Virus record (IMG/VR): IMGVR_UViG_3300032116_000004
Coordinates: 124,001-188,000 of that record
Direction: 5' to 3' (one strand)
DNA length: 64,000 bases
In this document: positions 26,004 through 46,929 of the stretch, piece by piece
Layout of the letters: the number at the start of each line of letters is the position of its first letter
Position numbering within the stretch: position 1 is the first letter of the stretch
Notes under the pieces: generated by a model
What the model was told of the DNA's origin: nothing
Seen by the model: only the letters and a program-made list of their open reading frames with translations
The model's database searches: none
Position numbers and translations under genes: made by a program

Positions 26004-26450
26004 ATGAAGTTGACACGCAGGGTTTTACACAATCAAGCCAAGCCTGTAGATTTCCAGTATCCTGTCCGCAATCATGATCTGGCCACCCAGATGTTTGGGT
26101 TGATGCGCTTGCAAAATGGCATAGGATTGGCAGCTCCACAGATTGGCCTTTCCAAACGATTGTTTGTGATGAGCGTTGACGGACACGATCGGGCGTGCTT
26201 TAATCCTGTCATAGTGTCTAGCAGTGATGTGTTTGCCGAATTTGAGGAAGGATGCTTGAGTTTTCCCGGAGACTCATGTATACTTAAAAGACCCGATGCG
26301 ATCAGGGCGAGATACCAAAATCATTTCGGTGATTGGGTCGAAGCAGATCTTTCGGGACTTGAAGCCAGATGTTTCCAACACGAGTTGGATCATCTACAAG
26401 GAATAACCATGCATGATCGAGCCAAGGAACAGAATGCAACAGAATCCTGA
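26004..26450 (+). CDS. def: Peptide deformylase
   Basis: GIGLAAPQIG, EGCLS, QHELDHL. Confidence 0.92.
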   Translation: MKLTRRVLHNQAKPVDFQYPVRNHDLATQMFGLMRLQNGIGLAAPQIGLSKRLFVMSVDGHDRACFNPVIVSSSDVFAEFEEGCLSFPGDSCILKRPDAIRARYQNHFGDWVEADLSGLEARCFQHELDHLQGITMHDRAKEQNATES

Positions 26451-30348: not shown

Positions 30349-30356
30349 TATAAATA
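30349..30356 (+). promoter_or_regulatory. T4-type late promoter TATAAATA
   Basis: Full consensus 5 nt before ATG 30362. Confidence 0.75.
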
Positions 30357-30361
30357 CTGGT

Positions 30362-32889: not shown

Positions 32890-35800
32890 ATGGACATCAA
32901 TGAATTAGACAGTTACCGCCTGTCGGACGCGGTAAAGTTTCACACTGAATTAAACCCTGCACTCTGGGACGGCGATCGCATGCGTCCCGAAGTGCGTGAG
33001 GCCCTGATCAAAATCGCCGATGATTTCCGCGAATTCCTGGGCATCAGTGATCTCGCAGTGGAAGATATCACTGTGAGTGGATCCAATGCCGCATACACCT
33101 ATACTCCCCATTCCGACATAGATCTGCATCTCTTAGTAGATTTCAGCAAGCTCAATCCCGACCAAGTATATCAAGAGCTGTTCAACGCAAAGAAATATCA
33201 ATACAACGATCAACACGATATAAAAATCAGAGGCTATGACGTCGAGCTCTATGTGCAAGACGCAGGCAAGCCTGTTCGCAGCCTTGGTGAGTATTCCATC
33301 GTGCGTGACGACTGGACTCGTATTCCCGTGCGACGCCAAGGCAATCTCGACGAAAAATCAACCCAAGCAAAATACGAAAAACTCAGAGACCTGATTGAGC
33401 TTGCACTGACCAGCGATGATCTCCAAACAGTCACCAATCTCACTGACGTGATAAAACGATATCGGCAGGCCGGATTGGATGAACATGGCGAGTTCGGACC
33501 TGAGAATCTGGCCTACAAGATCCTGCGCACACAGGGCTTGGTCAAGCGATTGTTTGATCATCGTGCCAGCCTAGAAGATTCAAAACTGAGCCTGGCTGAG
33601 CGCCGAAAGAAAAAGAAAAAATCCAAAAAGAAATTCCGTTACGGTTCTTTTGGTGGATACTATTATCCAGGCTATGGTTATTATGGTCAGACCGGCGACG
33701 CCGAAGCCGCAGACGGTGGTGGTGATGGGGGCGGAGAAAGTGTGCGCGAAGACACAGAGATCAAAGTCCAAGCCAAGAGCATACCCATAGACAAAGTGGT
33801 GCGACGCTTCGTGCATTTTGCCGCGCACTATCTCAAACTAGATCAACTGCCTCGCATCATCTTGCAAGGTGAAAAATTTACCAAGCACATCCATTCAATG
33901 GGCCATTATGTAGATGACAAGAAAATGATCGAGGTGGCCACGCACGGTCGCCACATCATGGACATCCTGCGCACCGTGGCACATGAACTCACACATTACA
34001 AACAGCATGAACGCTTGGGCCGAGACATGCCTGACACAGCGGGTCGCACTGGCAGTCCCTACGAAAATGAAGCCAATGCCAAGGCCGGCATAATTATGCG
34101 CCATTTCCAAAATCGTTATCCAGAATTCTTTGGCGCAGAAACAGTGGAAGAACAACTCACGGAGTTTTCACCCGCACAGTCTGGTGCTACCGGTGAAGAC
34201 GATGACATCGAAGCACACTATGGTGATCAGACTCCACCAGGACCAGAATTCCCTCCTACCATGCCCGCAGGCACTGTGAGGGTAGATGTGAGCGATGTGT
34301 ATGACTGGTATAAACTGGGACAGCATATCTCCAACATGAAAGGCTTGGGCAAGCATGACTTTGGTGCAGGTCCGCCCAGTTCCATAATCTCGTTTGGCGA
34401 TGAAGAAACTGAACATAAGTTTATCAAAGATCTTGAAGCCACGGGCCTAGATGTCACTGACATCGATCCCAAGGATCCCCGGCAACCCGCTGGCATGCGA
34501 AAAGTCAAGACCGATCCTACCTACAATGTAGACGAGGGTCTAGGAAAAACACTGGCCACTGGTGCCTTGGCAGCCGCTGCCGCACTGGGACAGCCAGCAC
34601 AGGCACAGGATGTGGGGCGCACGGCCTATCAGATAGGCAAGCAGATATATCAACCCTCGGGCATATTCACCCGTGCAGGTGCTGAAGAAGAACTCAAGGG
34701 CATAGCCCGAGACATGGCACGTGGCAGCAGAGAAATACGTGTGGGTGGCAAGTTGATCTATGGTGGCCCTAGACCGCAAGGTGAGCGTGTTGCGTCAAAC
34801 GCCGCGGCTGCATCAGCAGAAGAAGCCTATCGACAGGCCCTGGAAAATGCCATCAACCGCGCACAACAACAGCATGGTCCTATCACACTGGGCCCCGGCG
34901 GTTGGAAAGTTGTGGATTATGAAGCCGACCAGATGGGCAACACATTCCGTGCCATGGTGGCCATAGAAGGTCCTGCACCGCGCAGAGAATCCATACAGAC
35001 GCCTGTGAGTCGCAGCCAAAAGGATCGCGAAGATTACTACAAGTTTGTCATGGGCAAGGCCACGACAGGTCGTCCTTTGACACGCTCGGAACAAGAATTC
35101 ATCAAGACCTATCGTCTACAACAGAAAATACAAGGTAAAGTGGCCGAAGATGCCGCAGGATACATCCCCACCAAGAAGCAGGCCCGAGATCCACGTTTCA
35201 AAACAGCACTCACAGTGGACATCCGACCTGGACAGGTAGGCAAGGAAGCCAACAAGTTGGGATTGCAGACCGACAGCCAAGGACGTCCTGCACTGTTGAT
35301 CAAGAACTTGGCCAATGCCTTGAAGGAATACAAAGAGACTGGAGTGTTTGAAGCAGTCAATCCCGTGACTCCTGCCGTGCCAGACCCACGACAAAAAATA
35401 GATCCATATCAAGGGCAGGCCCAGAAACGACAAAGACCACAAGACCGACCAAAGAAAAAAACACCATCGAGCACTGGCAATCCAAGATTCGTCAATATCG
35501 AAGTCAAAGAAGACGAAGATCTCATGGAAGTCAAGATGTCGCCCGGGGCCTTGGAAGCCTGGGCACGATCACCTGAAGCCGAAGGTATACGTGCTGGCTT
35601 TGAAGCAGAAATGATCTTCCGTGATACCCGCCGTGACGAAGATGAAGACTACGATCAAGAACCTGACTACGACTACGATGAGCGGCCCGATGACATCGAC
35701 CATGTCATAGACTTCTTCTCCAATGATGACTATGGCTATGGTTTGAGTCGCCAAGGCGCCAGGAATCTACGAGAAAGCCTGTGGGAAGCCTATACGGAAT

Positions 35801-37989
35801 GGGTGGATGAACAGATCAGCGAGAGTTGGGACGAGAATGCCGAAGATCAAGTGCGTGACTACATGGAGACCAACGTCTGGGACGATGACTCAGAACGCGA
35901 AAGCCGTATCCAAGACAAGGTCGAGGAAATGTTTGGTGACGAGGCAGTGCCCGCTATAATGAAAGCCGGCGACAGCGCACCAAGATTCACCCGGAGTTCA
36001 GATCAAGATGAATATGCACAATCCAACGAATTATACCAAAAATTCAAGCAAGCATCCGATGCGGCCTACGAAGCATTCGAAGAAGAAATAACCAATGAGT
36101 TTGAAAGCCAAGGCGAATATTACGATGCGGCTCGCGAATATTATTGGGACATGACGCGAGAAGGCGGCGAGTTTGACGAGCGCGACTTCCTCCGTGACCG
36201 CTATGGTTACATGACTGACATCGCCAACGAAGAAAGCCTTGACTGGCCCTACTGGAGCGGCGGTTCCTCTGGCACTGGCAGCCGTGAGTGGAGCGATATT
36301 GGTGACAGTTTACAGCGTGCCATTGACATGCCAGTGAGAGTGAGTTCAGGCTATCACTCAACCACACGCCGGCCCGGTCTATGGATCATCGAACCCGACG
36401 GCAGCCTAGATCCCGATGATCGTGATGATGAAATGGGCCTGGAGATCGTGTCTCCGCCCTTGCCCTTGCCAGAAACCCTGGAAAAATTAAAACAGGTCAT
36501 TGAGTGGGGTAACTCAGAAGCCGATGCCTACACCAACTCGTCCACCGGCTTGCACATGGGCATCTCTATACCCTATGTGGGCGGTGACGTAGACTATGTC
36601 AAATTGGTGCTGTTCATGGGCGACGAATATGTGTTAGACAAGTTTGGTCGTGCTTCCAACACCTATGCGGCATCGGCCATGGAAAAACTACGCAACAGCA
36701 TGCGAGTGGCACGCCGCCGTGGCACCTTGACTGAAGCCCGATTTGATCCCATGGGTGCGCTAGAACTGGTGCAGAAAAATCTCATTGAACTGGCTGCTCG
36801 TTATGTGCAGAACGGTGTGGGAGACAGCAAGTATACTTCCGCACACATCCAGGACGGCTACATCGAGTTCCGTAGCCCTGGTGGTGATTATTTGAGCATG
36901 GAGAGTCGCGGTGAATATGATGACATCCGCAATACCATGTTGCGTTTTGCTCGGGCCATGCAGATCGCAGGCAGCCCCAGCCTGGAACGTCGAGAGTATG
37001 CCAAGAAACTCTATAAACTGATCTCACCTGGTGCACAGGATGACGGTCTCAAGTTATTTTCTCAATTTGCCGCTGGCACCATAACTCCAGAAGAACTCAA
37101 GAAACAGTGGGCCAATGCTGTGCTCCAGAAAGAGATACCCACCACTGGTCAAGAAGAGTGGGAAGTGTATGATCAGCGCAAGTCTGGTCCGGATGGAGTG
37201 ATCGACTCTTTCTATGCTGATGAATATGACACTGCCTATATGAAAGCCCAGGACAAGTATGGCAACACACCCGAATGGCGCAATTTGGACATCCGTAAGA
37301 AACAACCCTGGTATGATGTCAAGGATTCCTACGGTGACATCATACTCACTGTGAGAGCCAGAGATTTTGACAGCGCCAAACAAAAGGTCCAGGCAGAGTA
37401 TGGGGATCGACTCTCCGACGATTGGGAGATATATCGCAGGCCCGATGACACTCCTGAGCCAGAAAAGAAACTGAGTCCACGTGCTCAAGTGGCCAAACGC
37501 CTCAAAGAACCCAAGGTCACACCGGCAGTGGCCGCAGACAATGAGCGAGATCGTGAACAGATACAGGCCCGCATAGGTGAGCCTCAACCCGCAGGCGCAG
37601 TATCAGACGCCGGACACTATCGTGTGATGTGGGATGAGCGCAGGAATGGAACAGTAACCAGTGATTCTTTGAACATTGATGCTGCCAGTGCCGAAGCAGC
37701 CAGACAGAATGTGCTAGATGCGTTGCAAATGCAAGGTCGAGATGTCATACAGATATCTGCACACCCCCAACAGCCACCAGCCTGGCGGCGCAATCGAGAA
37801 CCTGTTGCCACATCAACACAGGGCGAATTCTCAGGACAGTGGCAAGTTCGTAATGCCAATACCGGAGAAGTGGTTTACACATTCAGTGGCATAGGCAACA
37901 GTCAAGGCGATGCCAATCGTGTGGCACAACAATGGGTCCAACGCACTAGATTTGATGATCCTGTAGAAGTCGTTCCAGAGTTGAGATAA
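32890..37989 (+). CDS. 1699-aa multidomain polyprotein: Pol-beta NTase, HExxH peptidase-like, signal-peptide module, amidoligase, others
   Basis: SGSNA..DIDLH..ELYVQD; AHELTH..ENEANA; GFEAEM/EPDGSL/LEIVSP/STGLH/IEFR. Confidence 0.8.
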   Translation: MDINELDSYRLSDAVKFHTELNPALWDGDRMRPEVREALIKIADDFREFLGISDLAVEDITVSGSNAAYTYTPHSDIDLHLLVDFSKLNPDQVYQELFNAKKYQYNDQHDIKIRGYDVELYVQDAGKPVRSLGEYSIVRDDWTRIPVRRQGNLDEKSTQAKYEKLRDLIELALTSDDLQTVTNLTDVIKRYRQAGLDEHGEFGPENLAYKILRTQGLVKRLFDHRASLEDSKLSLAERRKKKKKSKKKFRYGSFGGYYYPGYGYYGQTGDAEAADGGGDGGGESVREDTEIKVQAKSIPIDKVVRRFVHFAAHYLKLDQLPRIILQGEKFTKHIHSMGHYVDDKKMIEVATHGRHIMDILRTVAHELTHYKQHERLGRDMPDTAGRTGSPYENEANAKAGIIMRHFQNRYPEFFGAETVEEQLTEFSPAQSGATGEDDDIEAHYGDQTPPGPEFPPTMPAGTVRVDVSDVYDWYKLGQHISNMKGLGKHDFGAGPPSSIISFGDEETEHKFIKDLEATGLDVTDIDPKDPRQPAGMRKVKTDPTYNVDEGLGKTLATGALAAAAALGQPAQAQDVGRTAYQIGKQIYQPSGIFTRAGAEEELKGIARDMARGSREIRVGGKLIYGGPRPQGERVASNAAAASAEEAYRQALENAINRAQQQHGPITLGPGGWKVVDYEADQMGNTFRAMVAIEGPAPRRESIQTPVSRSQKDREDYYKFVMGKATTGRPLTRSEQEFIKTYRLQQKIQGKVAEDAAGYIPTKKQARDPRFKTALTVDIRPGQVGKEANKLGLQTDSQGRPALLIKNLANALKEYKETGVFEAVNPVTPAVPDPRQKIDPYQGQAQKRQRPQDRPKKKTPSSTGNPRFVNIEVKEDEDLMEVKMSPGALEAWARSPEAEGIRAGFEAEMIFRDTRRDEDEDYDQEPDYDYDERPDDIDHVIDFFSNDDYGYGLSRQGARNLRESLWEAYTEWVDEQISESWDENAEDQVRDYMETNVWDDDSERESRIQDKVEEMFGDEAVPAIMKAGDSAPRFTRSSDQDEYAQSNELYQKFKQASDAAYEAFEEEITNEFESQGEYYDAAREYYWDMTREGGEFDERDFLRDRYGYMTDIANEESLDWPYWSGGSSGTGSREWSDIGDSLQRAIDMPVRVSSGYHSTTRRPGLWIIEPDGSLDPDDRDDEMGLEIVSPPLPLPETLEKLKQVIEWGNSEADAYTNSSTGLHMGISIPYVGGDVDYVKLVLFMGDEYVLDKFGRASNTYAASAMEKLRNSMRVARRRGTLTEARFDPMGALELVQKNLIELAARYVQNGVGDSKYTSAHIQDGYIEFRSPGGDYLSMESRGEYDDIRNTMLRFARAMQIAGSPSLERREYAKKLYKLISPGAQDDGLKLFSQFAAGTITPEELKKQWANAVLQKEIPTTGQEEWEVYDQRKSGPDGVIDSFYADEYDTAYMKAQDKYGNTPEWRNLDIRKKQPWYDVKDSYGDIILTVRARDFDSAKQKVQAEYGDRLSDDWEIYRRPDDTPEPEKKLSPRAQVAKRLKEPKVTPAVAADNERDREQIQARIGEPQPAGAVSDAGHYRVMWDERRNGTVTSDSLNIDAASAEAARQNVLDALQMQGRDVIQISAHPQQPPAWRRNREPVATSTQGEFSGQWQVRNANTGEVVYTFSGIGNSQGDANRVAQQWVQRTRFDDPVEVVPELR

Positions 37990-38573
37990 TGCGATCTCAG
38001 GAATTTATCTCAGAAGTAAACTTTCCCGATGAGTTATCAGTGAGCGACCGCATACAAAACTATTTTTTTGATCGCGGCTATCAGTTGGCCGGCGAAGGAC
38101 GCGATCAGATAGCCTTGTTGAGTCCCAGAAACACCATACTCAAAGTCTTGGGCATAGGTGAAGATGAGCGCGAACAGATAGTAAAAAACTACGTGAAATT
38201 TTTCGTCAACAATCAGAACGATCCTTATATTCCCAGGATTTACAACGTGGGTGATTTTGAAGTAGATGGAGAAACATATTTTGTGTATGAGATGGAATAT
38301 CTAGACTATGTGGCCAACGAAGAAGCCACGCTGGACTATCTAGAAAATCTCATGTCAGCAGTGGCACGCGGACGTGATCGTGTGCAGGAGTTCATGAAGA
38401 ACAATCCTGCTCCTAAAGAACTGGATCGTGATGACATCGTGGGTTTAGTAAATACTACGCTGAAATTAGAACAAGCCTTGGGCGGCCAGGCACCATTGGA
38501 TCTCAGCCAGATAGAGAACCTTCGCCGCCGCAGTGATGGACATCTAGTGATAATGGACCCCTACAGCCTATGA
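37989..38573 (+). CDS. Protein-kinase-like protein with MRxxEF leader
   Basis: AGEGRD, ILKV, IPRIY, MEYL, DLSQIEN, VIMDP. Confidence 0.55.
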   Translation: MRSQEFISEVNFPDELSVSDRIQNYFFDRGYQLAGEGRDQIALLSPRNTILKVLGIGEDEREQIVKNYVKFFVNNQNDPYIPRIYNVGDFEVDGETYFVYEMEYLDYVANEEATLDYLENLMSAVARGRDRVQEFMKNNPAPKELDRDDIVGLVNTTLKLEQALGGQAPLDLSQIENLRRRSDGHLVIMDPYSL

Positions 38574-38968
38574 GAGCACAAGAATTATTAGTCGAAATCA
38601 CTCGCAGAGACTTCTTGCGTGGTGCAGGTGCCGTGGCTGGCTCTGCGGCATTGGGATCGGCACAGGCTCAATCCGATCGGAACATCACCAAGATTATCAA
38701 CTCGGCTGCCATGTTGTGGGTGATATGTAAAAAACACTATCCCAACAACCCCAACACCCGAGAACTAGAAGAAACAGTCAAACGGCTTTGGAAAAGTAAA
38801 AGCGACAATGCTGTGGCATTTAATGAAGAATACACAGCAATGAAAGAAAGATTGGCAGATTGGGAAGCCCGAGATCCTGCCGGCTATGCCAACTTTGTCA
38901 ACCGATATATGATGAACTTTGCCAAGATTAAAGCCAACTTGGAAACATTACCAGAGATGATGATATGA
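38570..38968 (+). CDS. Leader + twin-arginine signal protein
   Basis: MRAQELLVE then ITRRDFLRGAGAVAGSAALGSAQA. Confidence 0.75.
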   Translation: MRAQELLVEITRRDFLRGAGAVAGSAALGSAQAQSDRNITKIINSAAMLWVICKKHYPNNPNTRELEETVKRLWKSKSDNAVAFNEEYTAMKERLADWEARDPAGYANFVNRYMMNFAKIKANLETLPEMMI

Positions 38969-40809
38969 GAGCACAAGAATTCGCTAATTCCAAACTAGTC
39001 ATCTTTGACATCGACGATACCCTGGTCAACACAGACACCAAGGTCAATGTGGTGCGAGATGGCCGGATCGTGAAGCAACTCAACAGTCACGATTTCACGC
39101 ACTATCACTTACAGCCCGGTGAAGAGTTTGACTTTGGTGCTTTCCGTGATGCCCGCGAATTCTACACACAGGCCCGGCCCATACCCGGCATGATCCGCCA
39201 ACTCAAACAAGACATCGCCACGGGCAACAAAGTGATCATGCTTACTGCCCGCTCGGACTTCAATGACCGAGAAGTTTTCCTGGACACATTCCGCCAGTAT
39301 GGCATTGACATGTCAAAAGTGCATGTGTATCGTGCTGGTAACTTGAACATCAAAGCCGCCACAGAAGAAAAGAAAAAGATCATACTACAACATCTCTTGG
39401 GCAAAGAACACTACGACAAGATCATCATGTATGATGATTCTGTGCCCAATTTAAATGCTTTTCTTAGCCTCAAACAAGATTATCCATGGTCTAAGTTCTA
39501 TGCCTGGCACGTGGATCCATCAGGAAAGGCAGACGAGTATCATAGGACTGATATCCGTGTCACAGAAGTCAGTGCGGATCGCTTGCAACAGTATCTAAAT
39601 CGCGCTGGACAACAGGTTGATCGCAGACAGGAAAGAATGGCCCAGGCCCGTGAGCGACTCAACAAGAGTTATGAAATATACCATGCAGACCGTCCTGCTG
39701 GCTCCAGCCAGATTGTAGATCGTTTTGAATCTGACACCCCTGCGGAAGCCCAACGTTATTATGAAAAGTTTATTCAGAACTACGAAAGTGATCGAGACTT
39801 TGATTTACAACTGCGTCGAAGCACAGGCATCGTGGAAGATTCATTCCGAGGCATCGATATCTCCATGGAAAAGGAAGATGATGAAATCATGGTCCAGGCG
39901 TCGGCGGGTGGCAAGCAGTTAGGGTCAGTGTTGTTTGTGGAATACGATGGCTATCTCATGCCACAGGATCTTGAAGTAGATGAACGATTCCGTGGGCAAG
40001 GTATCGCCCAGGCCATGTATGACTATGTGAAAAGCCTGGGTTATCGCATACGCAGGAGTGGCCAGCAGACCGACGCAGGTTCTGGATTCTGGAGAAAACA
40101 TCGTCCAGAACAGAATGTCTGGGAACAAAGTGTGGCGAAAGGCGATAAAATGAGCCTCATTAATCTAGATCAATCCTTGGCCGACACACCATCGGTATGG
40201 AAAAAATTCATAAGTTTGTTGCCACCACAATTGGCCCGAGAGTTTGTGGATGAGCGTCCAAGACCCGATCAAGACGATATAGACTTTCTCACTCCTTTGC
40301 GTCTGGTCAGTCCGCAGCCTGTATCAGTGCGTGTGGCCGACTTATTGCGTCATCCAGAGAATCAAGGAACCATTGGTAGATCGCCCGACGATGTGGTAAC
40401 AGCAGTAAACCAACGATGGGGTCTCAAGATCCCGTCAGGTAAGAAATATGATCCCAATCCCGCACGATATCGTGCCTATGCCCAGATGGCACCCGGCACA
40501 GCCAGTCCTTCAGTCATGGCCGACGGGGTGATCCTGTTTGGAGCAGGCAGATTCGTGGCCGCGGCTCTGCGTGGTGATGAAACCATGCGTGTGTGGAGCA
40601 TGACAAGAAAGCAAGGCGTGAAGGAAGTAGAGGAAAACTTTGCTGATGGTCGAGTAAAGGGCAAGAGCCGCCCGGGTCGTGTGAAACGTGCGGGTGCTAG
40701 TTGTAGTGGATCAGTCACAGATCTGCGTGCCCGTGCCAAGAAGTATGGTGGAGAACGGGGCAAAATGTATCATTGGTGCGCCAACATGAAGTCAGGTCGG
40801 AAGAAATAA
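38965..40809 (+). CDS. Polyprotein: HAD phosphatase + GNAT + ParB-like + basic Cys module
   Basis: FDIDDTL/LTARS/YDD; VDERFRGQGIA..QTDAG; ILFGAGR; NFADG..HWCAN. Confidence 0.75.
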   Translation: MRAQEFANSKLVIFDIDDTLVNTDTKVNVVRDGRIVKQLNSHDFTHYHLQPGEEFDFGAFRDAREFYTQARPIPGMIRQLKQDIATGNKVIMLTARSDFNDREVFLDTFRQYGIDMSKVHVYRAGNLNIKAATEEKKKIILQHLLGKEHYDKIIMYDDSVPNLNAFLSLKQDYPWSKFYAWHVDPSGKADEYHRTDIRVTEVSADRLQQYLNRAGQQVDRRQERMAQARERLNKSYEIYHADRPAGSSQIVDRFESDTPAEAQRYYEKFIQNYESDRDFDLQLRRSTGIVEDSFRGIDISMEKEDDEIMVQASAGGKQLGSVLFVEYDGYLMPQDLEVDERFRGQGIAQAMYDYVKSLGYRIRRSGQQTDAGSGFWRKHRPEQNVWEQSVAKGDKMSLINLDQSLADTPSVWKKFISLLPPQLAREFVDERPRPDQDDIDFLTPLRLVSPQPVSVRVADLLRHPENQGTIGRSPDDVVTAVNQRWGLKIPSGKKYDPNPARYRAYAQMAPGTASPSVMADGVILFGAGRFVAAALRGDETMRVWSMTRKQGVKEVEENFADGRVKGKSRPGRVKRAGASCSGSVTDLRARAKKYGGERGKMYHWCANMKSGRKK

Positions 40810-40817
40810 GTAATATC

Positions 40818-41000
40818 ATGCGAGCAAGAGAACTCACAGGACACAAGTGGATCACCACTATAACCATAAGCAATCCTGACTATACCGGCCGGATTGATGT
40901 GTCAGTGTATGCCCACAATCAAGCACAGGCCCGACAACTGCTCAAAGCGCAGTATCGCATCCAGGATCATCACATCGGATCCATCAGGAAGGCGCCATGA
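40818..41000 (+). CDS. Small protein with MRAREL leader
   Basis: Leader motif; ATGA overlap with next gene. Confidence 0.65.
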   Translation: MRARELTGHKWITTITISNPDYTGRIDVSVYAHNQAQARQLLKAQYRIQDHHIGSIRKAP

Positions 41001-41314
41001 GAGTCGCAGAATTCATCGCAGAAGATCTGTCAGCGGCTGGCTTCCGTATCCATGTTAGTCCACACCTGGATAATCGTGCAGAAAATCGCGGCATATCCAT
41101 GGCCACCATCTTGGGCATACTCAACAGATTGGATCGGGTGCGCAGACACATCCGTGGATTTGAGCCCAACTCACAGTTCAATGTCTATGACAGCCAACAC
41201 AACATACATCTTGGCATGATGCGATCAGGATTCGATCCAGATAAACTGTTGTTGAACACAGTGTATCACAACGAAAACTACCACGGGCGCAATCCCGTCA
41301 TAAAGGTTCGATAA
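40997..41314 (+). CDS. Possible BECR/DUF4258-like ribonuclease with leader
   Basis: MRVAEFIAE; SPHLDNRAENRGIS ... LNTVY. Confidence 0.45.
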   Translation: MRVAEFIAEDLSAAGFRIHVSPHLDNRAENRGISMATILGILNRLDRVRRHIRGFEPNSQFNVYDSQHNIHLGMMRSGFDPDKLLLNTVYHNENYHGRNPVIKVR

Positions 41315-41901
41315 TGAGAGCACAGGAGTTCCAGGAAGTGGCACTGCTGACCCGGGTCAAAGGCAAGGGCGAGGAGCCCAGCAATCTGCCCAAGTTTGGA
41401 CGGCCCATACTGCCCAAAGAAGAGATCAAATACCTTGGGAAAAAAGTCGGCAACATGGGCCGCTATGAGATCTGGCGAGACTATGTGGGTAGCCAGGTCA
41501 GTTACATCCTGGTAGATCCCCAAAGCCGCAGAGCCATAATCCATGCCTTTGGCAGCAGATATCAGAGAAATCCCAACTCATTCATAGTGGCAGGCCTGTA
41601 TGCCGCACCCGGCAATCCTGTGCGTGCCAGCCAGTTCTATCATGCCTTGATCACGGAATTAGGACTGGATCTCATTTCTGATATCAAGCAGAGTCCCGGA
41701 GGCTACAAAGTGTGGCGTGAATTACAGCAAAGATTTCGTGACGTGAATGTATATGGCTATGATACCAAGCGCAACGAACTGCTGAACGTCACTGCACGTG
41801 ATGAAGAAATGACACATGTGCCCGCTGAAATCGTGCGCAAGGGCGGGCCCGATGTCAAAGACGTGGCCCGCAACATCAGGCTAGTGGCCACAGCAAAGTG
41901 A
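41314..41901 (+). CDS. GNAT-like protein with leader
   Basis: MRAQEFQE; ASQFYHAL...LISDIKQSPGGYKVWREL. Confidence 0.5.
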   Translation: MRAQEFQEVALLTRVKGKGEEPSNLPKFGRPILPKEEIKYLGKKVGNMGRYEIWRDYVGSQVSYILVDPQSRRAIIHAFGSRYQRNPNSFIVAGLYAAPGNPVRASQFYHALITELGLDLISDIKQSPGGYKVWRELQQRFRDVNVYGYDTKRNELLNVTARDEEMTHVPAEIVRKGGPDVKDVARNIRLVATAK

Positions 41902-41934
41902 TCGCCAGCAGGCGCACACGCCGGTAAATATCGC

Positions 41935-42225
41935 ATGAAATCAACATTCGTAAAATTAAACGTAGATCTACACTGCGATTGGAAAAAGACTCCGCCGCCC
42001 TATAGACTCTATGTCAACGATGAACTGTTCACTGAACGCACCTACATCTGGGGTGGCACACAGTATCTCCAAGAAATCATCAGCCTCAGCGCACCGCCTG
42101 GACGCTACAGCCTACGTATCGACAATCTGGGCGATCCTGACTGCAAATTCAAACTGCGCAATCTCTCAGTAGAAACAGGATCAGCCACGGTGCTGGATTC
42201 TAAAACCGTGGAGATCACCCAATGA
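41935..42225 (+). CDS. Hypothetical protein
   Basis: TAAATA 4 nt upstream. Confidence 0.7.
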   Translation: MKSTFVKLNVDLHCDWKKTPPPYRLYVNDELFTERTYIWGGTQYLQEIISLSAPPGRYSLRIDNLGDPDCKFKLRNLSVETGSATVLDSKTVEITQ

Positions 42226-42404
42226 GAGCCCGAGAATTCGTCACAGAAACCACGGTCAGCGGTGCCATAGCCACGGTTGCACAGCCCATGATGGCCGTGC
42301 TCGCAAGAGAACCTGCACAAGCACCCGCTGATAAATATAAAACTACTTCTAGGAAGCCGGCACCAGATGTTAACCGACGATTTAAAAACTCTTTTAGCAA
42401 GTAA
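42222..42404 (+). CDS. Small protein with MRAREFVTE leader
   Basis: Leader motif; ATGA coupling. Confidence 0.65.
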   Translation: MRAREFVTETTVSGAIATVAQPMMAVLAREPAQAPADKYKTTSRKPAPDVNRRFKNSFSK

Positions 42405-42807
42405 CTTTGCATATTATCTCAAGGCACAGATGTTCCATTGGAACGTGGAAGGCCCTGATTTCGGGCAACTGCACGAATTTTTCGGCGAAGTCTACGCTGA
42501 TGCCTACGGCGCTGTGGACCAGATAGCCGAATACATCCGCACCCTGGATGACTACGCTCCCGGAAGCCTAGAGCGTTTTTCAGAACTCAGCGAGATCCCT
42601 GGACAGACCAAGATTCCCCGAGCCCGGCTCATGCTGGAAGAATTGCTACAAGATACCGAAACCATGAAAGCCATGGTCATGCGTGTGTTTGAATCTGCAC
42701 AGGCCGAAGGTCGCGAAGACATCGCTAACTTCATGGCCGAACGCCAAAACAGTCATGGCAAGTATGCCTGGCAGACACGCTCATTCCTCAAGGATCAACG
42801 AGCATGA
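42367..42807 (+). CDS. dps: Dps-family mini-ferritin
   Basis: HWNVEGPDFGQLHEFFGEVY...DQIAEYIR...HGKYAW. Confidence 0.9.
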   Translation: MLTDDLKTLLASNFAYYLKAQMFHWNVEGPDFGQLHEFFGEVYADAYGAVDQIAEYIRTLDDYAPGSLERFSELSEIPGQTKIPRARLMLEELLQDTETMKAMVMRVFESAQAEGREDIANFMAERQNSHGKYAWQTRSFLKDQRA

Positions 42808-43739
42808 GCAATGACATAGCCCGCATACTGACCAAGTTTGATCAACTCAACGAAGGGTTGAACCAACAACAGACTGCCGTGAAGCAGATGCCTGCACTGT
42901 TTAAAATGAAATCACAGGGTCCTGTGTTGGGCGGAGATCCCAACCGCCCTGCGCCCAGCAAAGGTTACTATTTTGGTGGTGAGGGCGAGGAACCCACTGT
43001 GAATCGCGGTGGTTACAATAAACTACGAGATCGCACAGATTATCTTGACAAGCGTGATATCTTGTTCCGCCAGCTCACTCCTGGCATAGATCCACAAACC
43101 AGAGAAGCCATCAAAGATCGATTGGCCCAATTAGAAAAAGCTGCCGAGATGTCTGGGCTGACAGAAAACACCGAAGACAATCCCATGAGAGATGCAGTGC
43201 TTGGGCGCATCCGTCGTGGCAGATTGGATCTCATAGAAAAATATGGTCTGGACCATGTGCTGTCCGCTGTGGATGATGTCACAGACGGTGATGATGATTG
43301 GTACGAAATTGGATCCAGTGATGTCAGCGCCTATATCAAGCGTGTGGAAGATCTCTTGCGTGATCACTATGGTAGCCGTGACGAAGTAGTTGAAAGCGCC
43401 ACTACCGAAGACGTGATCTCCACTGTTAAGAAAAAACTGGGCGACTATCTACAAGACATAGCCACGCAGATCAAGACAGATCCTGATCTCAAAGACAAAA
43501 TGCCCCAGGACATGGATCGGATCTCTCCTGTGGTCAAGACCATCACCACAGACGATGGCAAAGAAATCAAGATACACGGCAACGAAGATGACGGATTCCG
43601 CATCACTATAAAGAACAAGGCCTTGTCATCCGAATTTGACAATCTTGACGAAGCTGTGATGGCCTGCGAGATGTATTGTGCTCGCCGACGCAACATGCAA
43701 GAACAAACGTCAAACAACGACTATCTGGAAGAACGATAA
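42804..43739 (+). CDS. Modular hypothetical protein with xxE junctions
   Basis: QLNE, GLTE, VVE junctions. Confidence 0.7.
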   Translation: MSNDIARILTKFDQLNEGLNQQQTAVKQMPALFKMKSQGPVLGGDPNRPAPSKGYYFGGEGEEPTVNRGGYNKLRDRTDYLDKRDILFRQLTPGIDPQTREAIKDRLAQLEKAAEMSGLTENTEDNPMRDAVLGRIRRGRLDLIEKYGLDHVLSAVDDVTDGDDDWYEIGSSDVSAYIKRVEDLLRDHYGSRDEVVESATTEDVISTVKKKLGDYLQDIATQIKTDPDLKDKMPQDMDRISPVVKTITTDDGKEIKIHGNEDDGFRITIKNKALSSEFDNLDEAVMACEMYCARRRNMQEQTSNNDYLEER

Positions 43740-46399
43740 TGAATCTGTTTAATCTAATTGAAAATACCACAGGCGGCTACGACAATCTCCGCGCACTGTT
43801 ACAGGCCGTGAGCACCCGCTCGCCAGCCGATCTCAACATAGGTGGTGAACCCATCACCCTGGACTACATGGAAGCTAACTTCCTCAACGGTATCTATCGA
43901 GCATATTTGAAAGCCGGACGCCAAGAAGAATTCATCCAGGACCTGGGCGATGCACGGCGCTTTGACATGCACATGAAGAAACTGCGCGATCTCATCGCTA
44001 AACAGAAATCCTTCCGTGGATCAGTTCCGGGTCAACGTGGTGTCACAGGCGATGTTCCTGCTGGTGTGATGGAAGGTCTGGAAGCCTTGGAAGAGATAGC
44101 CATGCAGGATCCCAACAATCCCACAGATCAAAATGCCGGCAAATTGAACTGGACTCGCATGATCCAGGACTACATGGGCAACAAACCCTACACTGAATTT
44201 GAATTTGGCACGGATCGTCCGCTCACTCTGTATCGCACACAGATCTATGCCATACTCAAAGCATTTGGCAACATGAAACCACAGCAGAAACTCAACATCA
44301 TCCTCAACACCTTTGGCAACAAAGTGGCTACCGTGGAATACCTTGACAAACTGCGTGCCAAGGGCATGATGCCCAAAAAAGTGCCTGCCTATGTGGCGCC
44401 TGGCACAGAGGCTCCTGCACCGGGACAGATGAGCCTTCCGGGCATAGACATGCCTCGCATCAAAGAAGCTCAAAAAAAAAGTCCGCAAGAATTAGCTAGA
44501 GACACGGCTGTTTCGGCCAAGGTCCAACGTGCGTTCCAACTGGCCAGGGCTCGTCAACCTGCCGCTGCCTCTGACATCGAAGCCTTTGTCAAAGATGAAA
44601 TAGAACGTGGCGAAGAACTAGCACAACAGGTCGGTCAGTTACAGCAAGACAATGAACAACAGAGCCAGCAGATAGCACAACTGACCAAGGCCGTGAGCCA
44701 GCAAGCCAAGGCCGAACCTGAACCAAAGCCACCTGCACCATCAGCACCTGCCGCACGGGCACCCACGGCACCTGCCAAACCAGAAAAAGAACCCACTGCC
44801 AAAGCAGAGCCCGAGGCCCTGCCCAAGGACAAAGAAGAACCCAAGACCGAACCCAAGGCCGAACCTGCACCGCAGACACAACCGGCTCCAGCCAAGGCTC
44901 GCAAGCCCAGGGCTAAACCTCGTGCCAAACCACAAAAGGCCCCCGGGGAATTGCCGCCCGTGGATACCACCATCCAGATGCCACCACAGCAGATACCCGA
45001 TCAGCGACCTTCAGCGCAGATATTGCAGTTTCCTGGCGGCAAGAAAGATGAAGTAGGCGCTGCCATGCAAGGCCTGGATCTTGGTGATTTGCCACGTGCC
45101 GCGGGACAAAACGAAAGCGTGAGAGTCACTGTGAGAGGCAATCCGTTGTTTGAAGGCAAGGATGGCACTGTGAAACAACGCATCGCCGATGACTTCTTCC
45201 TGGTAGATGTAGATGGATTTGGATCACATGCTTTCCATGTCAGCAAATTGGTGTTTGAGATGCAAACCCGACTGGATCGCTTCAATATTGACAGACCCAT
45301 GTTGCCATCCGGCGTGGCCAAGGTCCAATACGCCCGTGACAACAACATGTATGATGATGCCCGCATACAAGAAGCCTTGCCTGACAAGGCCATGGCTGTG
45401 TTGAAAAATCTACAGCAACAGCAACAACAACCAGAACCTGCAATTGATCTCAATACACCTGCTGGTCCACGACGTGGTCGTCCTACCAATGCCCAACGAG
45501 CACAGCGCCACGAAGAGTTCTTGACTCTCCGACGTCGCATAGCATTGTTGGACGAGTTGATCCAGATGAAAGAACAGATTGATCGCTTGTTCCTCAAGGC
45601 ACAGAATGTGCGTGGCGGTATCTATCCTGGCTTGCAAGCAGACATTGAGATGGAAGAACTGTATCCTGTGCCAGAAACAGATCGCCAATTCCAAGATCTC
45701 CGAGACAAATACACCAAAGACTTAACCGCACTGCAAAAGTTCTTGGCCATGAAGAAGGCAGTGTATCGTGAAGACGAAGATTCGATGTTGGGCGAAAGCA
45801 CTGCCTTGGTGCGCTTGAAACAAGCACGTCAGGCACTGAGTCAACAAGGTGTGGCGGAAGGCACCGACGACGTCAAAAAGCGAATGTCCAAGTTGGAAGC
45901 ACTGGCCTTGGCTGCAAATCGTGCCGGTGATGATGCAAAATGCAAAATGTATCAGCAAAAGATTCAATCACTCAAACAAAAATTATCTAGAGATATGTCA
46001 ACAGGTGTAGCGGAAGCAGTTACAGATGTAAAGGCTGGCATGGCTGAAATATATCATCGCCTGGCTCCCAAAATAGAACGCCACCGAGACAGTTTCCTTG
46101 CCGGGCAACTGTATGATGAGTTGGAAAACTATGCTGAACTACACGGTGCCGAAGGCGAGTTCAAAAGGATGATGGCCACGGCCAGGAACAGTGCCCACAT
46201 GGAATATGATACCAACCCGGGTGGTTTCCAAAACTGGTTCTGGTTCTTGCCATTTGAAAAACAGTTGGATGAAAAACAAGATGCTTGTTACCGCAAGGTA
46301 AAAAGTCGTTACAAAGTATGGCCTTCGGCTTATGCATCGGGTGCCTTGGTCCAGTGCCGCAAGAAAGGTGCTGACAACTGGGGCAACAAGAAAAAATGA
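43739..46399 (+). CDS. Large modular polyprotein with Pro/Lys/Glu linker and GVAE junctions
   Basis: MNLFNLIE leader; QGVAEG, TGVAEA, QLDE; C-terminal ACYRKVKSRYKVWPSAYASG module. Confidence 0.75.
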   Translation: MNLFNLIENTTGGYDNLRALLQAVSTRSPADLNIGGEPITLDYMEANFLNGIYRAYLKAGRQEEFIQDLGDARRFDMHMKKLRDLIAKQKSFRGSVPGQRGVTGDVPAGVMEGLEALEEIAMQDPNNPTDQNAGKLNWTRMIQDYMGNKPYTEFEFGTDRPLTLYRTQIYAILKAFGNMKPQQKLNIILNTFGNKVATVEYLDKLRAKGMMPKKVPAYVAPGTEAPAPGQMSLPGIDMPRIKEAQKKSPQELARDTAVSAKVQRAFQLARARQPAAASDIEAFVKDEIERGEELAQQVGQLQQDNEQQSQQIAQLTKAVSQQAKAEPEPKPPAPSAPAARAPTAPAKPEKEPTAKAEPEALPKDKEEPKTEPKAEPAPQTQPAPAKARKPRAKPRAKPQKAPGELPPVDTTIQMPPQQIPDQRPSAQILQFPGGKKDEVGAAMQGLDLGDLPRAAGQNESVRVTVRGNPLFEGKDGTVKQRIADDFFLVDVDGFGSHAFHVSKLVFEMQTRLDRFNIDRPMLPSGVAKVQYARDNNMYDDARIQEALPDKAMAVLKNLQQQQQQPEPAIDLNTPAGPRRGRPTNAQRAQRHEEFLTLRRRIALLDELIQMKEQIDRLFLKAQNVRGGIYPGLQADIEMEELYPVPETDRQFQDLRDKYTKDLTALQKFLAMKKAVYREDEDSMLGESTALVRLKQARQALSQQGVAEGTDDVKKRMSKLEALALAANRAGDDAKCKMYQQKIQSLKQKLSRDMSTGVAEAVTDVKAGMAEIYHRLAPKIERHRDSFLAGQLYDELENYAELHGAEGEFKRMMATARNSAHMEYDTNPGGFQNWFWFLPFEKQLDEKQDACYRKVKSRYKVWPSAYASGALVQCRKKGADNWGNKKK

Positions 46400-46929
46400 G
46401 ATATCGAGAGATCCTTGAAGCATGCTGGACTGGTTATAGAAAAGCCGGTATGAAGCGCAAGGGTGATCGCTGGGTTCCCAACTGTGTGCCTGTGAGCGAA
46501 CAGCACATGGAAGAAAATCTCCGAGACTGGTTCAAAGAGAAGTGGGTGCGATTTGGGCCCGACGGTAAGATCCGTGGTGACTGCGCCAGAGGTTCCGACT
46601 CAGAAGGCAAGCCAAAGTGCCTGCCACAGTCAAAAGCACACAGCCTAGGCAAAAAAGGTCGTGCGTCGGCAGCAGCCAAGAAGCGTAGAGAAGATCCCAA
46701 TCCAGAACGCAGAGGTGCTGCCAAGAATGTGTCCACAAAGGTTCGCGAGGATGCAGTGCAAGATCTAGTGAAAGATCTAAAAAATCCACACAGTTATGAT
46801 GCCATTGATCACATGATGCAGACCATTGCTAAAAAATCTGGAATCACTGCAAAAGAACTGCATGATCGTTTCGTGAAAAAACATGACATAACTCCAGACG
46901 AATACATCAAACGCAAAGGCAACAAATGA
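46396..46929 (+). CDS. Leader + basic Cys modules
   Basis: MRYREILE; ACWTGY..VPNCVP; MEE-NLRDWFKEKW..KPKCLP; VRE. Confidence 0.7.
   Translation: MRYREILEACWTGYRKAGMKRKGDRWVPNCVPVSEQHMEENLRDWFKEKWVRFGPDGKIRGDCARGSDSEGKPKCLPQSKAHSLGKKGRASAAAKKRREDPNPERRGAAKNVSTKVREDAVQDLVKDLKNPHSYDAIDHMMQTIAKKSGITAKELHDRFVKKHDITPDEYIKRKGNK

What the first reader, a model, noticed from the sequence alone, without database searches (positions are those of the whole stretch)
40126..46018. Recurrent QGVAEG-type junction conserved at DNA level
Seen: caaggtgtggcggaaggc (45845), acaggtgtagcggaagca (46001), caaagtgtggcgaaaggc (40126, QSVAKG), caaggcgtgaaggaagta (40612), all at module boundaries; a looser QGKVAED at 35131. 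The first two bracket a ~50-aa module. Inference: a short sequence that may serve both as protease site and as microhomology for inserting or swapping modules.
Basis: partly seen in the sequence, partly recalled or inferred. Interest (0 to 1): 0.6.

Follow-up and report, generated by a model that had tools for sequence, protein, structure and literature searches.

The report
In-frame recombination linker in phage polyproteins
A six-residue junction (QGVAEG), written with the same rare codons in well over a hundred uncultured freshwater giant-phage contigs, marks the exact points where small protein modules are inserted, deleted and reordered inside large phage proteins, and it also looks like a cutting site for the phage's T4-type head protease.

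Summary
All five sites are in frame and lie at real module boundaries of three multi-module proteins. Only 45845 is canonical; the other four are decayed copies.

The 12-nt core is in frame in a long ORF at 263 of 265 sites. Very diverse modules lie on both sides.

- **Breakpoints:** between relatives, similarity ends within 1-2 codons of the core. Whole-module indels are flanked by the core as a 15-18-nt direct repeat.
- **Codons:** they do not vary freely. In loci collected by protein homology alone, 10 of 19 GVAE peptides use GGT GTG GCG GAA, against 0.6% expected from codon usage.
- **Protease site:** the genome is a T4-like jumbo phage with a gp21-type (S77) prohead protease. Junctions follow a hydrophobic-x-Glu rule. 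Neighbouring genes start with leaders like the T4 capsid-targeting sequence.

Best reading: this is an inter-module linker with two roles, a protease site (inferred by analogy) and a short homology patch for in-frame module shuffling (supported by comparison of relatives). I found no prior description. I rate it a new variant of known kinds: T4 internal proteins, PeSL linkers and polyvalent proteins.

The parts
45845..45862 (+). Canonical linker CAAGGTGTGGCGGAAGGC (QGVAEG). It joins the upstream part of the protein to module M1.
   Evidence: The exact 17-mer is in at least 120 viral contigs. HSPs to relatives start at residues 723-726. Metagenome contigs show joints at 45843 and 45861.
45863..46000 (+). 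Module M1, 46 aa (GTDDVKK...). In relatives it is a mobile module placed after M2, or absent.
   Evidence: The order is permuted in L006-L011, and the module is missing in L013-L015.
46001..46018 (+). Decayed linker ACAGGTGTAGCGGAAGCA (TGVAEA) at the M1|M2 boundary. It matches the consensus at 13 of 18 bases.
   Evidence: Relatives have GLAE, LVAE, GVNE or LMQE at this point. A contig loose end at 46000 continues with a canonical core.
46019..46258 (+). Module M2 (AVTDVKAGMAEIY ... NWFWFLPFE).
   Evidence: A contig joint 46258->45843 shows the order M2 then linker-M1 in a relative.
46259..46396 (+). Module M3, a C-terminal Cys-containing module (..DACYRKVKSRYKVWPSAYASG..). It is also found in 365 phage records, almost all cyanophages.
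   Evidence: It matches phrog_727 and gives a sub-threshold DUF5872 hit.
43676..46399 (+). Multi-module protein P0002. The likely true start is ATG 43739, with leader MNLFNLIE.
40126..40143 (+). Decayed linker CAAAGTGTGGCGAAAGGC (QSVAKG) after the GNAT-like module of P0001. It matches the consensus at 16 of 18 bases.
   Evidence: HSPs end at residues 388-393. The orthologous junction in L173 reads ..WEQGVAE followed directly by NFADGK.
40612..40635 (+). Decayed linker QGVKEVEE before the C-terminal module of P0001. The predicted cut is V-E-E|N.
   Evidence: Across 66 different upstream contexts of this module, P1 is Glu in 66 of 66 and P3 is V/I/L/M in 59 of 66.
40636..40806 (+). Module E of P0001 (NFADGRVKGKSRPG...). 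It also occurs as a stand-alone gene behind an MRAHEFITE-type leader.
38965..40809 (+). Multi-module protein P0001: a HAD-like module, an unknown module, a GNAT-like module, module D and module E. The modules are shuffled in relatives.
35131..35151 (+). Decayed linker CAAGGTAAAGTGGCCGAAGAT (QGKVAED). It is the consensus with a 3-nt insertion and one synonymous change.
   Evidence: It lies at the largest internal cluster of HSP ends in P0003. The downstream module (..SGYIPTKKQARDPRF) has 26 different upstream contexts; P1 is Glu in 25 and P3 is V/I/L/M in 20.
32890..37989 (+). Polyvalent protein P0003: a nucleotidyltransferase-like N-terminus, an HExxH zincin-like module, an amidoligase domain and many unknown modules.
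   Evidence: Amidoligase_2, 29.6 bits. One search gives MPTase-PolyVal at E 0.014, below the cut-off. One search shows module shuffling.
37989..38015 (+). Leader MRSQEFISE, which resembles the T4 capsid-targeting sequence, on a 194-aa ORF.
   Evidence: The T4 capsid-targeting sequence string is held in PMC8442874.
38570..38968 (+). Small ORF with leader MRAQELLVE followed at once by a twin-arginine (Tat) signal.
   Evidence: (PF10518, 28.8 bits).
41314..41337 (+). Leader MRAQEFQE on a 195-aa ORF.
46396..46929 (+). A 177-aa ORF with leader MRYREILE followed by a string of small Cys-containing modules. The same modules occur in cyanophage syn9 gp114.

Best explanation
The motif is the inter-module linker of polyproteins that resemble strings of T4 internal proteins. 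They belong to a clade of uncultured freshwater T4-like jumbo phages of about 300-350 kb. The linker appears to work at two levels.

**As peptide ([K/E]-Q-G-V-A-E|G).** It is one version of a general junction rule, hydrophobic-x-Glu followed by a small residue. This is the type of site cut by gp21-type (S77) prohead proteases. A polyprotein would enter the prohead through one N-terminal leader like the capsid-targeting sequence. It would then be cut into modules of about 50-200 aa that travel with the DNA.

**As DNA (A(A/G) CAA GGT GTG GCG GAA GGC).** The 15-18 identical bases give the phage recombination machinery a patch of homology in a fixed reading frame. Crossovers between linkers of co-infecting or ancestral genomes then insert, delete, permute or swap whole modules without breaking frame or fold. 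Linkers that mutate drop out of this exchange and decay. The window's four degenerate sites are such decayed copies.

**Shown:**
- The junction is real.
- Breakpoints coincide with it.
- Its codons are fixed far beyond codon usage.
- It is virus-specific.

**Inferred:**
- Cleavage occurs after the Glu, by the S77 protease.
- The polyproteins are packaged in the capsid.
- Homology-guided recombination, rather than a dedicated enzyme, makes the joints.
For: **Spread and frame.**
- The exact 17-mer is at 162 sites in at least 120 viral contigs.
- The 12-nt core occurs 265 times in the loci, 263 of them in frame in ORFs of 80 aa or more.
- Up to 7 cores lie in one locus. Neighbouring cores are a median of 79 aa apart.

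**Breakpoints.**
- Identity between relatives ends within 1-2 codons of the core on either side.
- The same upstream module is joined to several downstream modules, and the reverse.
- Modules M1, M2 and M3 are permuted among homologues.
- In-frame indels of 459 nt and 318 nt are flanked by 17-18-nt repeats of the core.
- Metagenome contigs show joints at 45843 and 45861.

**Codons.**
- 87 of 152 sites not selected by the DNA search, and 10 of 19 sites in homology-collected loci, use GGT GTG GCG GAA. Codon usage predicts 0.6-1.2%.
- GCG is the rarest Ala codon in these sequences.
- The loci range from 36 to 47% GC (5th-95th percentile).
- Internal control: the leader MRAQEF is conserved as peptide, but its commonest 18-mer is only 5 of 35.

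**Protease side.**
- The genome has an S77 protease and a gp23-type capsid protein. S77 is found in 6 of 24 linker-bearing records, most of which are fragments.
- Junction rule: P1 is Glu in 66 of 66 and 25 of 26 contexts. P3 is V/I/L/M in 59 of 66 and 20 of 26, against a 21% background.
- T4-family head proteases cut after Glu at short motifs (PMC5694885 and PMC9026906).
- Leaders such as MRAQEFIAE resemble the T4 capsid-targeting sequence MKTYQEFIAE.
- Four of the five such leaders in the genome lie in this gene cluster.
- 41 of 98 linker-bearing ORFs start with such a leader, against 105 of 952 other ORFs.
- Stand-alone copies of module E start with a leader that ends exactly at the polyprotein junction.
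- Tat-type signals sit directly after junctions. They could only function if freed at the N-terminus.
Against: - No cleavage, packaging or recombination was observed directly.
- P3 of the canonical linker is Val. To my recollection the T4 sites have Leu or Ile there.
- The gene cluster lies next to the DNA polymerase and a ClpB-like gene, far from the head genes. Virion location is therefore not implied by position.
- Each genome has only 0-4 exact cores, so selection for evolvability within a genome would be weak.
- Homologous junctions do decay. Only 3 of 8 junctions upstream of M1 are canonical.
- A homology patch of 17-18 nt is short for T4-type recombination.
- Selection for intact modules alone would also place surviving breakpoints at linkers.
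- The 102-call control set for leaders includes non-genic frames.
Confidence: 0.55

Rival explanations
1. The motif is only a peptide-level linker or cleavage site. The shared DNA spelling reflects recent common descent of junctions that travel with their modules, and has no role in recombination.
For: Orthologous junctions drift at both peptide and DNA level. Exact copies per genome are few. Many sites share one flank and are therefore not independent.
Against: The same four codons, including the rarest Ala codon, occur in dozens of contexts with unrelated flanks on both sides. Flanks of related pairs show third-position divergence (identity 0.58-0.89), whereas flanks of unrelated pairs are at random identity right up to the core. 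The equally conserved leader peptide varies freely in its codons. Indels carry the core as a 17-18-nt direct repeat.
Confidence: 0.15
2. A dedicated enzyme recognises the roughly 17-bp core as its site. This could be a site-specific recombinase or a homing-type endonuclease of these phages. Modules would then be true mobile in-frame cassettes, comparable to integron cassettes.
For: Conservation falls off sharply at both ends of a 15-18-nt core. Some ORFs stop 0-7 codons after a linker, like empty sockets. The indel pattern of one cassette plus one core copy fits integration of a circle. PeSL mini-circles in T4-type phages are a precedent (PMC2839356).
Against: I did not look for a linked recombinase or nuclease, and none was found. 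T4-type recombination is said to need only small patches of homology (PMC2839356). Junctions without the canonical core also carry indels.
Confidence: 0.12
3. The junction is cut, but not by the head protease. The cutter would be the zincin-like module embedded in the 1699-aa protein, or a host protease acting in the cytoplasm. Alternatively, the junction is a flexible spacer that is never cut.
For: Iyer et al. 2017 predict self-processing of polyvalent proteins by embedded zincin peptidases (PMC5512222). P0003 has an HExxH module with weak MPTase-PolyVal similarity. The cluster lies among replication genes.
Against: Glu at P1 with a hydrophobic P3 is the signature of T4-family head proteases. 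Leaders like the capsid-targeting sequence accompany these proteins. The zincin hit is below the family cut-off. P0001 and P0002 have no zincin module.
Confidence: 0.2
4. The fixed codons serve an RNA-level or translation-level signal, such as a structure, a pause site or an internal start.
For: The core is purine-rich and G-rich, with stretches that loosely resemble a Shine-Dalgarno sequence (read from the sequence).
Against: There is no Rfam family. There is no stable or shared fold in five contexts, with z-scores from -0.37 to +0.85. The logo shows no conserved start codon just downstream of the core.
Confidence: 0.03

Closest known systems
T4 internal proteins (IPI-III, Alt) with their capsid-targeting sequence, processed by the gp21 prohead protease
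   Same: Both are diverse small cargo proteins that share only a short N-terminal leader (T4: MKTYQEFIAE; here: MRAQEFIAE and similar). Both have a cut site after Glu, and a gp21-type S77 protease is present. The T-even internal-protein loci are hyperplastic (PMC3012670, PMC9026906, PMC2839356).
   Different: Here the cargo modules are concatenated into polyproteins of up to 1699 aa. The junction is repeated internally. The internal junction, unlike the leader, is fixed at the codon level. Packaging and cleavage are untested.
PeSL cassettes of T4-type phages (Arbiol et al. 2010, PMC2839356)
   Same: Both are short conserved sequences that flank variable units and act as recombination linkers. 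Both account for indels between close relatives, and both occur in T4-type phages.
   Different: PeSLs are intergenic composites of about 100 bp (promoter plus stem-loop) that move whole genes. This linker is 15-18 nt, coding and in frame, has no stable RNA fold, and moves parts of proteins.
Polyvalent proteins of phages and conjugative elements (Iyer et al. 2017, PMC5512222)
   Same: Both are large phage proteins that combine unrelated enzymatic domains with many unknown modules (here nucleotidyltransferase-like, zincin-like, amidoligase, HAD and GNAT). Both show extensive mosaicism, and delivery into the host with the DNA is predicted for the family.
   Different: That paper never uses the word 'linker' and proposes processing by embedded zincins. 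A junction conserved at the codon level is not part of the description.
Inner-body and ejection proteins of phiKZ, 201phi2-1 and SPN3US, cut at many sites by gp21-related proteases
   Same: Both involve large head-internal proteins cut after Glu at short motifs, with redundant sites (PMC9026906, PMC5694885).
   Different: The motif there is S/A/G-x-E or A-x-E, and the proteins are not module strings with a DNA-level linker. The nearest cultured relatives by capsid protein (PA5oct and Phosso, about 66% identity) lack the DNA core.
Linker sequences of the modular theory of phage evolution
   Same: The idea is the same: short conserved DNA at module borders guides exchange (discussed in PMC2839356; the theory itself is from my own knowledge).
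   Different: That idea was proposed for gene modules. Here it operates inside reading frames and is coupled to a peptide function.

Membership tests
Substrates of a T4 gp21-type (S77) prohead protease / capsid-targeted internal proteins | The same genome encodes an S77 prohead protease together with T4-type head genes. | tested here: met
   PF03420 scores 95.5 bits at genome position 312548-312967. Gp23 (PF07068) scores 332 bits. The gene order is portal, scaffold, protease, scaffold, capsid.
Substrates of a T4 gp21-type (S77) prohead protease / capsid-targeted internal proteins | The cut site is C-terminal to Glu within a short motif that has an aliphatic P3. | tested here: met
   P1 is Glu in 66 of 66 and 25 of 26 junction contexts. 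P3 is V/I/L/M in 59 of 66 and 20 of 26. The canonical linker reads V-A-E|G. This is a sequence match only.
Substrates of a T4 gp21-type (S77) prohead protease / capsid-targeted internal proteins | An N-terminal leader of about 10 residues, like the capsid-targeting sequence, ends in the cut site. | tested here: met
   Leaders include MRSQEFISE, MRAQELLVE, MRAQEFQE, MRYREILE and MNLFNLIE in the window, and MRAQEFIAE in relatives. They are enriched on linker-bearing ORFs, 41 of 98 against 105 of 952.
Substrates of a T4 gp21-type (S77) prohead protease / capsid-targeted internal proteins | The proteins are found cleaved inside virions. | not testable with these tools
   This needs virion proteomics. 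The complex prediction of protease with linker peptide gave no answer.
Polyvalent proteins (Iyer et al. 2017) | One phage polypeptide holds two or more unrelated effector-type domains. | tested here: met
   P0003 has Amidoligase_2 above its cut-off, plus nucleotidyltransferase-like and HExxH modules. P0001 has DUF2608/HAD above its cut-off and a sub-threshold GNAT hit.
Polyvalent proteins (Iyer et al. 2017) | A zincin-like MPTase acts as the hub domain. | tested here: inconclusive
   An HExxH motif is present in P0003. PF18818 gives E 0.014 and 15.9 bits against a cut-off of 27.5.
PeSL recombination cassettes | An intergenic element combines an early promoter with a stem-loop. | tested here: not met
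   The core is in frame inside ORFs at 263 of 265 sites. There is no stable fold.
PeSL recombination cassettes | The element flanks units that are present or absent between close relatives. | tested here: met
   The window and L004 differ by a 459-nt module with an 18-nt overlap. L124 and L087 differ by 318 nt with a 17-nt overlap.
Integron-type site-specific cassettes | A dedicated recombinase acts on a structured attachment site. | not tested
   I made no search for a linked recombinase. The core has no inverted repeat or stable fold.

The most novel reading that the evidence does not exclude
The roughly 17-bp core is the attachment or cleavage site of a dedicated phage enzyme. The modules of 50-200 aa are then true mobile cassettes that hop in frame between polyproteins of different phages. 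This would be a protein-level counterpart of the integron, supplying injected effectors.
Probability: 0.12. Interest if true: 0.92.

Novelty: new variant of a known kind. Interest (0 to 1): 0.78.

Why it matters
- **Phage evolution.** It would show that modular evolution in phages also operates inside genes. It would do so through a portable linker that keeps the reading frame, marks a processing site and guides recombination, a bacterial-virus counterpart of exon shuffling.
- **Annotation.** The linker and the hydrophobic-x-Glu rule give a simple way to cut thousands of unannotated giant phage ORFs into their functional units. By analogy with T4 internal proteins, many of these units are likely injected anti-defence effectors.
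- **Testability.** Both roles can be tested. The Glu can be mutated for cleavage, and the linker can be recoded synonymously for recombination.
- **Engineering.** It suggests a natural design for loading several cargo proteins into T4-type capsids behind a single targeting leader.

Tried and rejected
- **Paralogous modules inside the genome.** blastp found none.
- **Close DNA relatives among cultured phages.** None were found. The nearest isolates by capsid protein, PA5oct and Phosso, lack the core even with one mismatch allowed.
- **Complex prediction, S77 protease with a 41-aa linker segment.** The result was no answer (score 0.01). It is not evidence either way.
- **RNA element.** There is no Rfam family and no stable or shared fold.
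- **Prokaryote genomes.** The 18-mer matched 56 stretches. All but one are high-GC chance or unrelated hits. The exception (L323) is a 39% GC contig with 3 copies, binned with a Bacteroidetes MAG, which gives only a weak hint of the host.
- **Late-promoter scan (TATAAATA).** There are only 8 forward copies in the genome, one of them just before ORF 30362. This is too few to time the expression of the cluster.
- **Literature.** Searches for the peptide string and for conserved linkers in jumbo-phage polyproteins found no prior description. Repoila et al. 1994 is not held in the library, so I cite it only through other papers.
- **Structure prediction of the C-terminal modules.** I did not run it. 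No usable alignment exists because the modules are permuted among relatives.

Full report
**1. What is in the window**

The window is bases 124001-188000 of a single 315,778-bp virus record, estimated 91% complete. They lie in three long ORFs.

| ORF | Length | Content |
|---|---|---|
| 32890-37989 | 1699 aa | nucleotidyltransferase-like N-terminus, HExxH module, amidoligase domain |
| 38965-40809 | 614 aa | HAD-like and GNAT-like parts |
| 43676-46399 | 907 aa | no Pfam family |

Taken alone, the window does not make the case.
- Only 45845 carries the consensus DNA.
- 40126 matches it at 16 of 18 bases. By my own arithmetic, tens of such pairs are expected by chance in 64 kb.
- The pattern test is circular, because the pattern was built from the sites.
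- The genome holds no paralogous modules and only five six-frame G[VI]AE hits.

**2. Relatives show that the sites are module borders**

I collected homologues of the 907-aa protein from viral contigs by protein similarity. Its last three modules are separable units.

- M1 covers residues 724-775, M2 covers 776-861 and M3 covers 862-907.
- In six relatives M2 precedes M1, and M3 sits at the end of the next ORF. In three others M1 is absent.
- HSPs start at residues 723-726 and 777-780, which are the two motif sites.
- A 93%-identical relative (L004) carries an extra 153-aa module. It is flanked on both sides by the linker, written with the same 15 bases.

The other two proteins behave the same way.
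- The five modules of the 614-aa protein occur in many orders and combinations, with borders at residues 388-393 and about 550-557.
- Bin 750-759 holds the largest internal cluster of HSP ends in the 1699-aa protein, 23 ends, at the QGKVAED site.
- Orthologous junctions in relatives can carry the canonical peptide where the window has a decayed one. In L173 the GNAT module ends ..WEQGVAE and is followed directly by the last module.

**3. The linker is widespread, in frame and virus-specific**

These hold 162 sites, often 2-4 per contig, spaced by multiples of three.
- Across all loci held, the 12-nt core occurs 265 times, 263 of them in frame in ORFs of 80 aa or more.
- Up to seven cores lie in one locus. 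Neighbouring cores in one ORF are a median of 79 aa apart, with a main cluster at 50-82 aa.
- The consensus peptide is [K/E]-Q-G-V-A-E-G-[S]. Information content falls to background within two codons on either side.
- In 596 Gb of prokaryote genomes the 18-mer gave 56 stretches. All but one are high-GC chance or unrelated hits.
- Near-complete genomes of the clade hold 0-4 exact copies, clustered within a few kb.

**4. Breakpoints map to the core**

Among 231 in-frame sites, 36 pairs share only the upstream flank and 30 share only the downstream flank. In both sets, per-base identity drops from about 0.9 to about 0.3 within one or two codons of the core.

- One upstream module is found joined to three different downstream modules, and one downstream module to four different upstream ones.
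- An all-against-all DNA comparison found in-frame indels whose ends overlap by 17-18 bases of the core. It also found indels at variant linkers and at gene starts.
- Contigs from independent freshwater metagenomes show joints at 45843 and 45861, and a loose end at 46000 that continues with a canonical core. These are assemblies of relatives, not reads.

**5. Codons do not vary freely**

| Sample | Sites using GGT GTG GCG GAA | Expected from codon usage |
|---|---|---|
| Sites in DNA-ascertained loci that were not themselves selected by the exact search | 87 of 152 (57%) | 0.7% |
| 142 loci collected by protein homology alone | 10 of 19 (53%) | 0.64% |

- From the window genome's own codon usage the expectation is 1.2%.
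- GCG is the rarest Ala codon in these sequences.
- The loci span 36-47% GC (5th-95th percentile).
- As an internal control, the N-terminal leader MRAQEF is equally conserved as peptide in the same loci. Its commonest 18-mer accounts for only 5 of 35.
- Flanks of related pairs show ordinary third-position divergence, with identity of 0.58-0.89.
- The linker is not immutable. Of eight homologous junctions upstream of M1, three are canonical and the rest have drifted.

**6. Why a protease site is likely**

The genome is T4-like. It has portal, scaffold, S77 (gp21-type) prohead protease and gp23-type capsid genes in T4 order. S77 is found in 6 of 24 linker-bearing records, most of which are fragments of genomes of about 340 kb.

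T4-family head proteases cut after Glu at short motifs (PMC5694885 and PMC9026906). Junctions here follow that rule whether or not they are canonical.
- For the last module of the 614-aa protein, 66 different upstream contexts have Glu at P1 in 66 and V/I/L/M at P3 in 59.
- For a module of the 1699-aa protein, the figures are 25 of 26 and 20 of 26.
- The background frequency of V/I/L/M is 21%.

Genes of the cluster begin with leaders such as MRSQEFISE, MRAQELLVE, MRAQEFQE and MRYREILE. Relatives have MRAQEFIAE. The T4 capsid-targeting sequence is MKTYQEFIAE, a string held in PMC8442874. Its role and its processing at residues 8 and 10 are described in PMC9026906.
- Four of the five such leaders in the genome lie in this cluster.
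- They are enriched on linker-bearing ORFs, 41 of 98 against 105 of 952. The control set includes non-genic frames.
- Stand-alone copies of a module start with a leader that ends exactly where the polyprotein junction ends.
- Some leaders run straight into a canonical linker.
- Tat-type signals lie directly after junctions, which makes sense only if the N-terminus is freed.

All of this is inference by analogy. No cleavage was observed, and the complex prediction gave no answer.

**7. Why recombination at the core is likely**

The sharp breakpoints, the direct-repeat indels and the codon fixation together point to exchange guided by the DNA identity. T4-type phages offer a precedent in PeSLs, conserved intergenic elements that flank variable genes and recombine into mini-circles. 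The same paper notes that T4 recombination needs only small patches of homology and links similar elements to the variable internal-protein loci (PMC2839356).

A donor carrying linker-module-linker can add a module and one linker copy to a recipient that has a single linker. Linkers that mutate leave this pool and decay, which fits the window's four degenerate sites.

Several caveats apply.
- A patch of 17-18 nt is short.
- There are few copies per genome.
- Selection for intact modules would by itself favour junction breakpoints.
- A dedicated enzyme cannot be excluded.
- RNA-level explanations found no support.

**8. Comparison with what is known, and verdict**

The proteins fit the polyvalent-protein concept of Iyer et al. 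2017. That paper never uses the word "linker" and proposes zincin self-processing. The zincin-like module here is below the family cut-off.

The nearest cultured phages by capsid protein, PA5oct and Phosso at about 66% identity, lack the core. Cyanophage proteins such as syn9 gp114 are strings of the same small Cys-containing modules without the canonical linker. Searches of the held literature found no description of the motif.

- **Observation:** confirmed.
supported, with the protease role inferred and the shuffling role shown by comparison.
- **Novelty:** a new variant of known kinds.
- **Interest:** 0.78.

Noticed in passing
window 38570-38968; L004:815-1273; window about 34540-34615: Signal-peptide-like stretches sit directly after predicted junctions. 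The small ORF at 38570 has leader MRAQELLVE followed by a Pfam TAT_signal. The module inserted in L004 (and the one in L068) starts ..EEIDRRGFLKGLGAAA. The 1699-aa protein has an Ala-rich hydrophobic stretch ending AQAQ right after ..NVDE. Some released modules may therefore be exported.
   Followed up: partly
L039, L041, L050, L070, L118, L134 (sites listed): Some ORFs stop 0-7 codons after a canonical linker (for example ..QGVAE*..QGVAEGKK*). They could be scars of module loss or sockets for module gain.
   Followed up: no
window 46396-46929; L276 (syn9 gp114); L277 (S-B64 AWD90049): The same small Cys-containing modules (..CWxGY..VPNCVP.., ..WF..W...G.C...KCLP.., ..DACYxKVKSRYxVWPSAYASG..) are strung together in T4-like cyanophage proteins. 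They are joined there by hydrophobic-x-Glu junctions but without the canonical DNA linker.
   Followed up: partly
window 37989, 38570, 38965, 41314, 46396, 43739: Nearly every gene of this cluster begins with a leader resembling the T4 capsid-targeting sequence. Whole-gene indels between relatives have their breakpoints at the ATGAGAGC start, as reported for the T-even internal-protein loci.
   Followed up: partly
window 26413-28695: The phage encodes a 760-aa ClpB/ClpA-like double-AAA+ protein (Clp_N, AAA, AAA_2, ClpB_D2-small) a few kb upstream of the polyprotein cluster. It has no protease domain.
   Followed up: no
window 33600-33745 (residues about 238-285 of the 1699-aa protein): A Lys-run followed by a Tyr/Gly-rich and Gly/Asp-rich low-complexity stretch lies between the first two modules. 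A similar stretch precedes a module junction in L192.
   Followed up: no
window 43676-43741: The 907-aa ORF most likely starts at ATG 43739, which overlaps the stop of ORF 42804-43739, rather than at TTG 43676. This gives the leader MNLFNLIE.
   Followed up: partly
window 30349-30362: One of only eight forward TATAAATA copies in the genome (the T4 late-promoter consensus, from my own knowledge) lies 5 nt before the ATG of ORF 30362-31882, at the head of the cluster.
   Followed up: no
window 44900-46400: Contigs from freshwater, lake-water and so-called 'fungus' metagenome runs from 18 studies hold this stretch. Five more runs hold only about half of it, consistent with mosaic relatives.
   Followed up: partly
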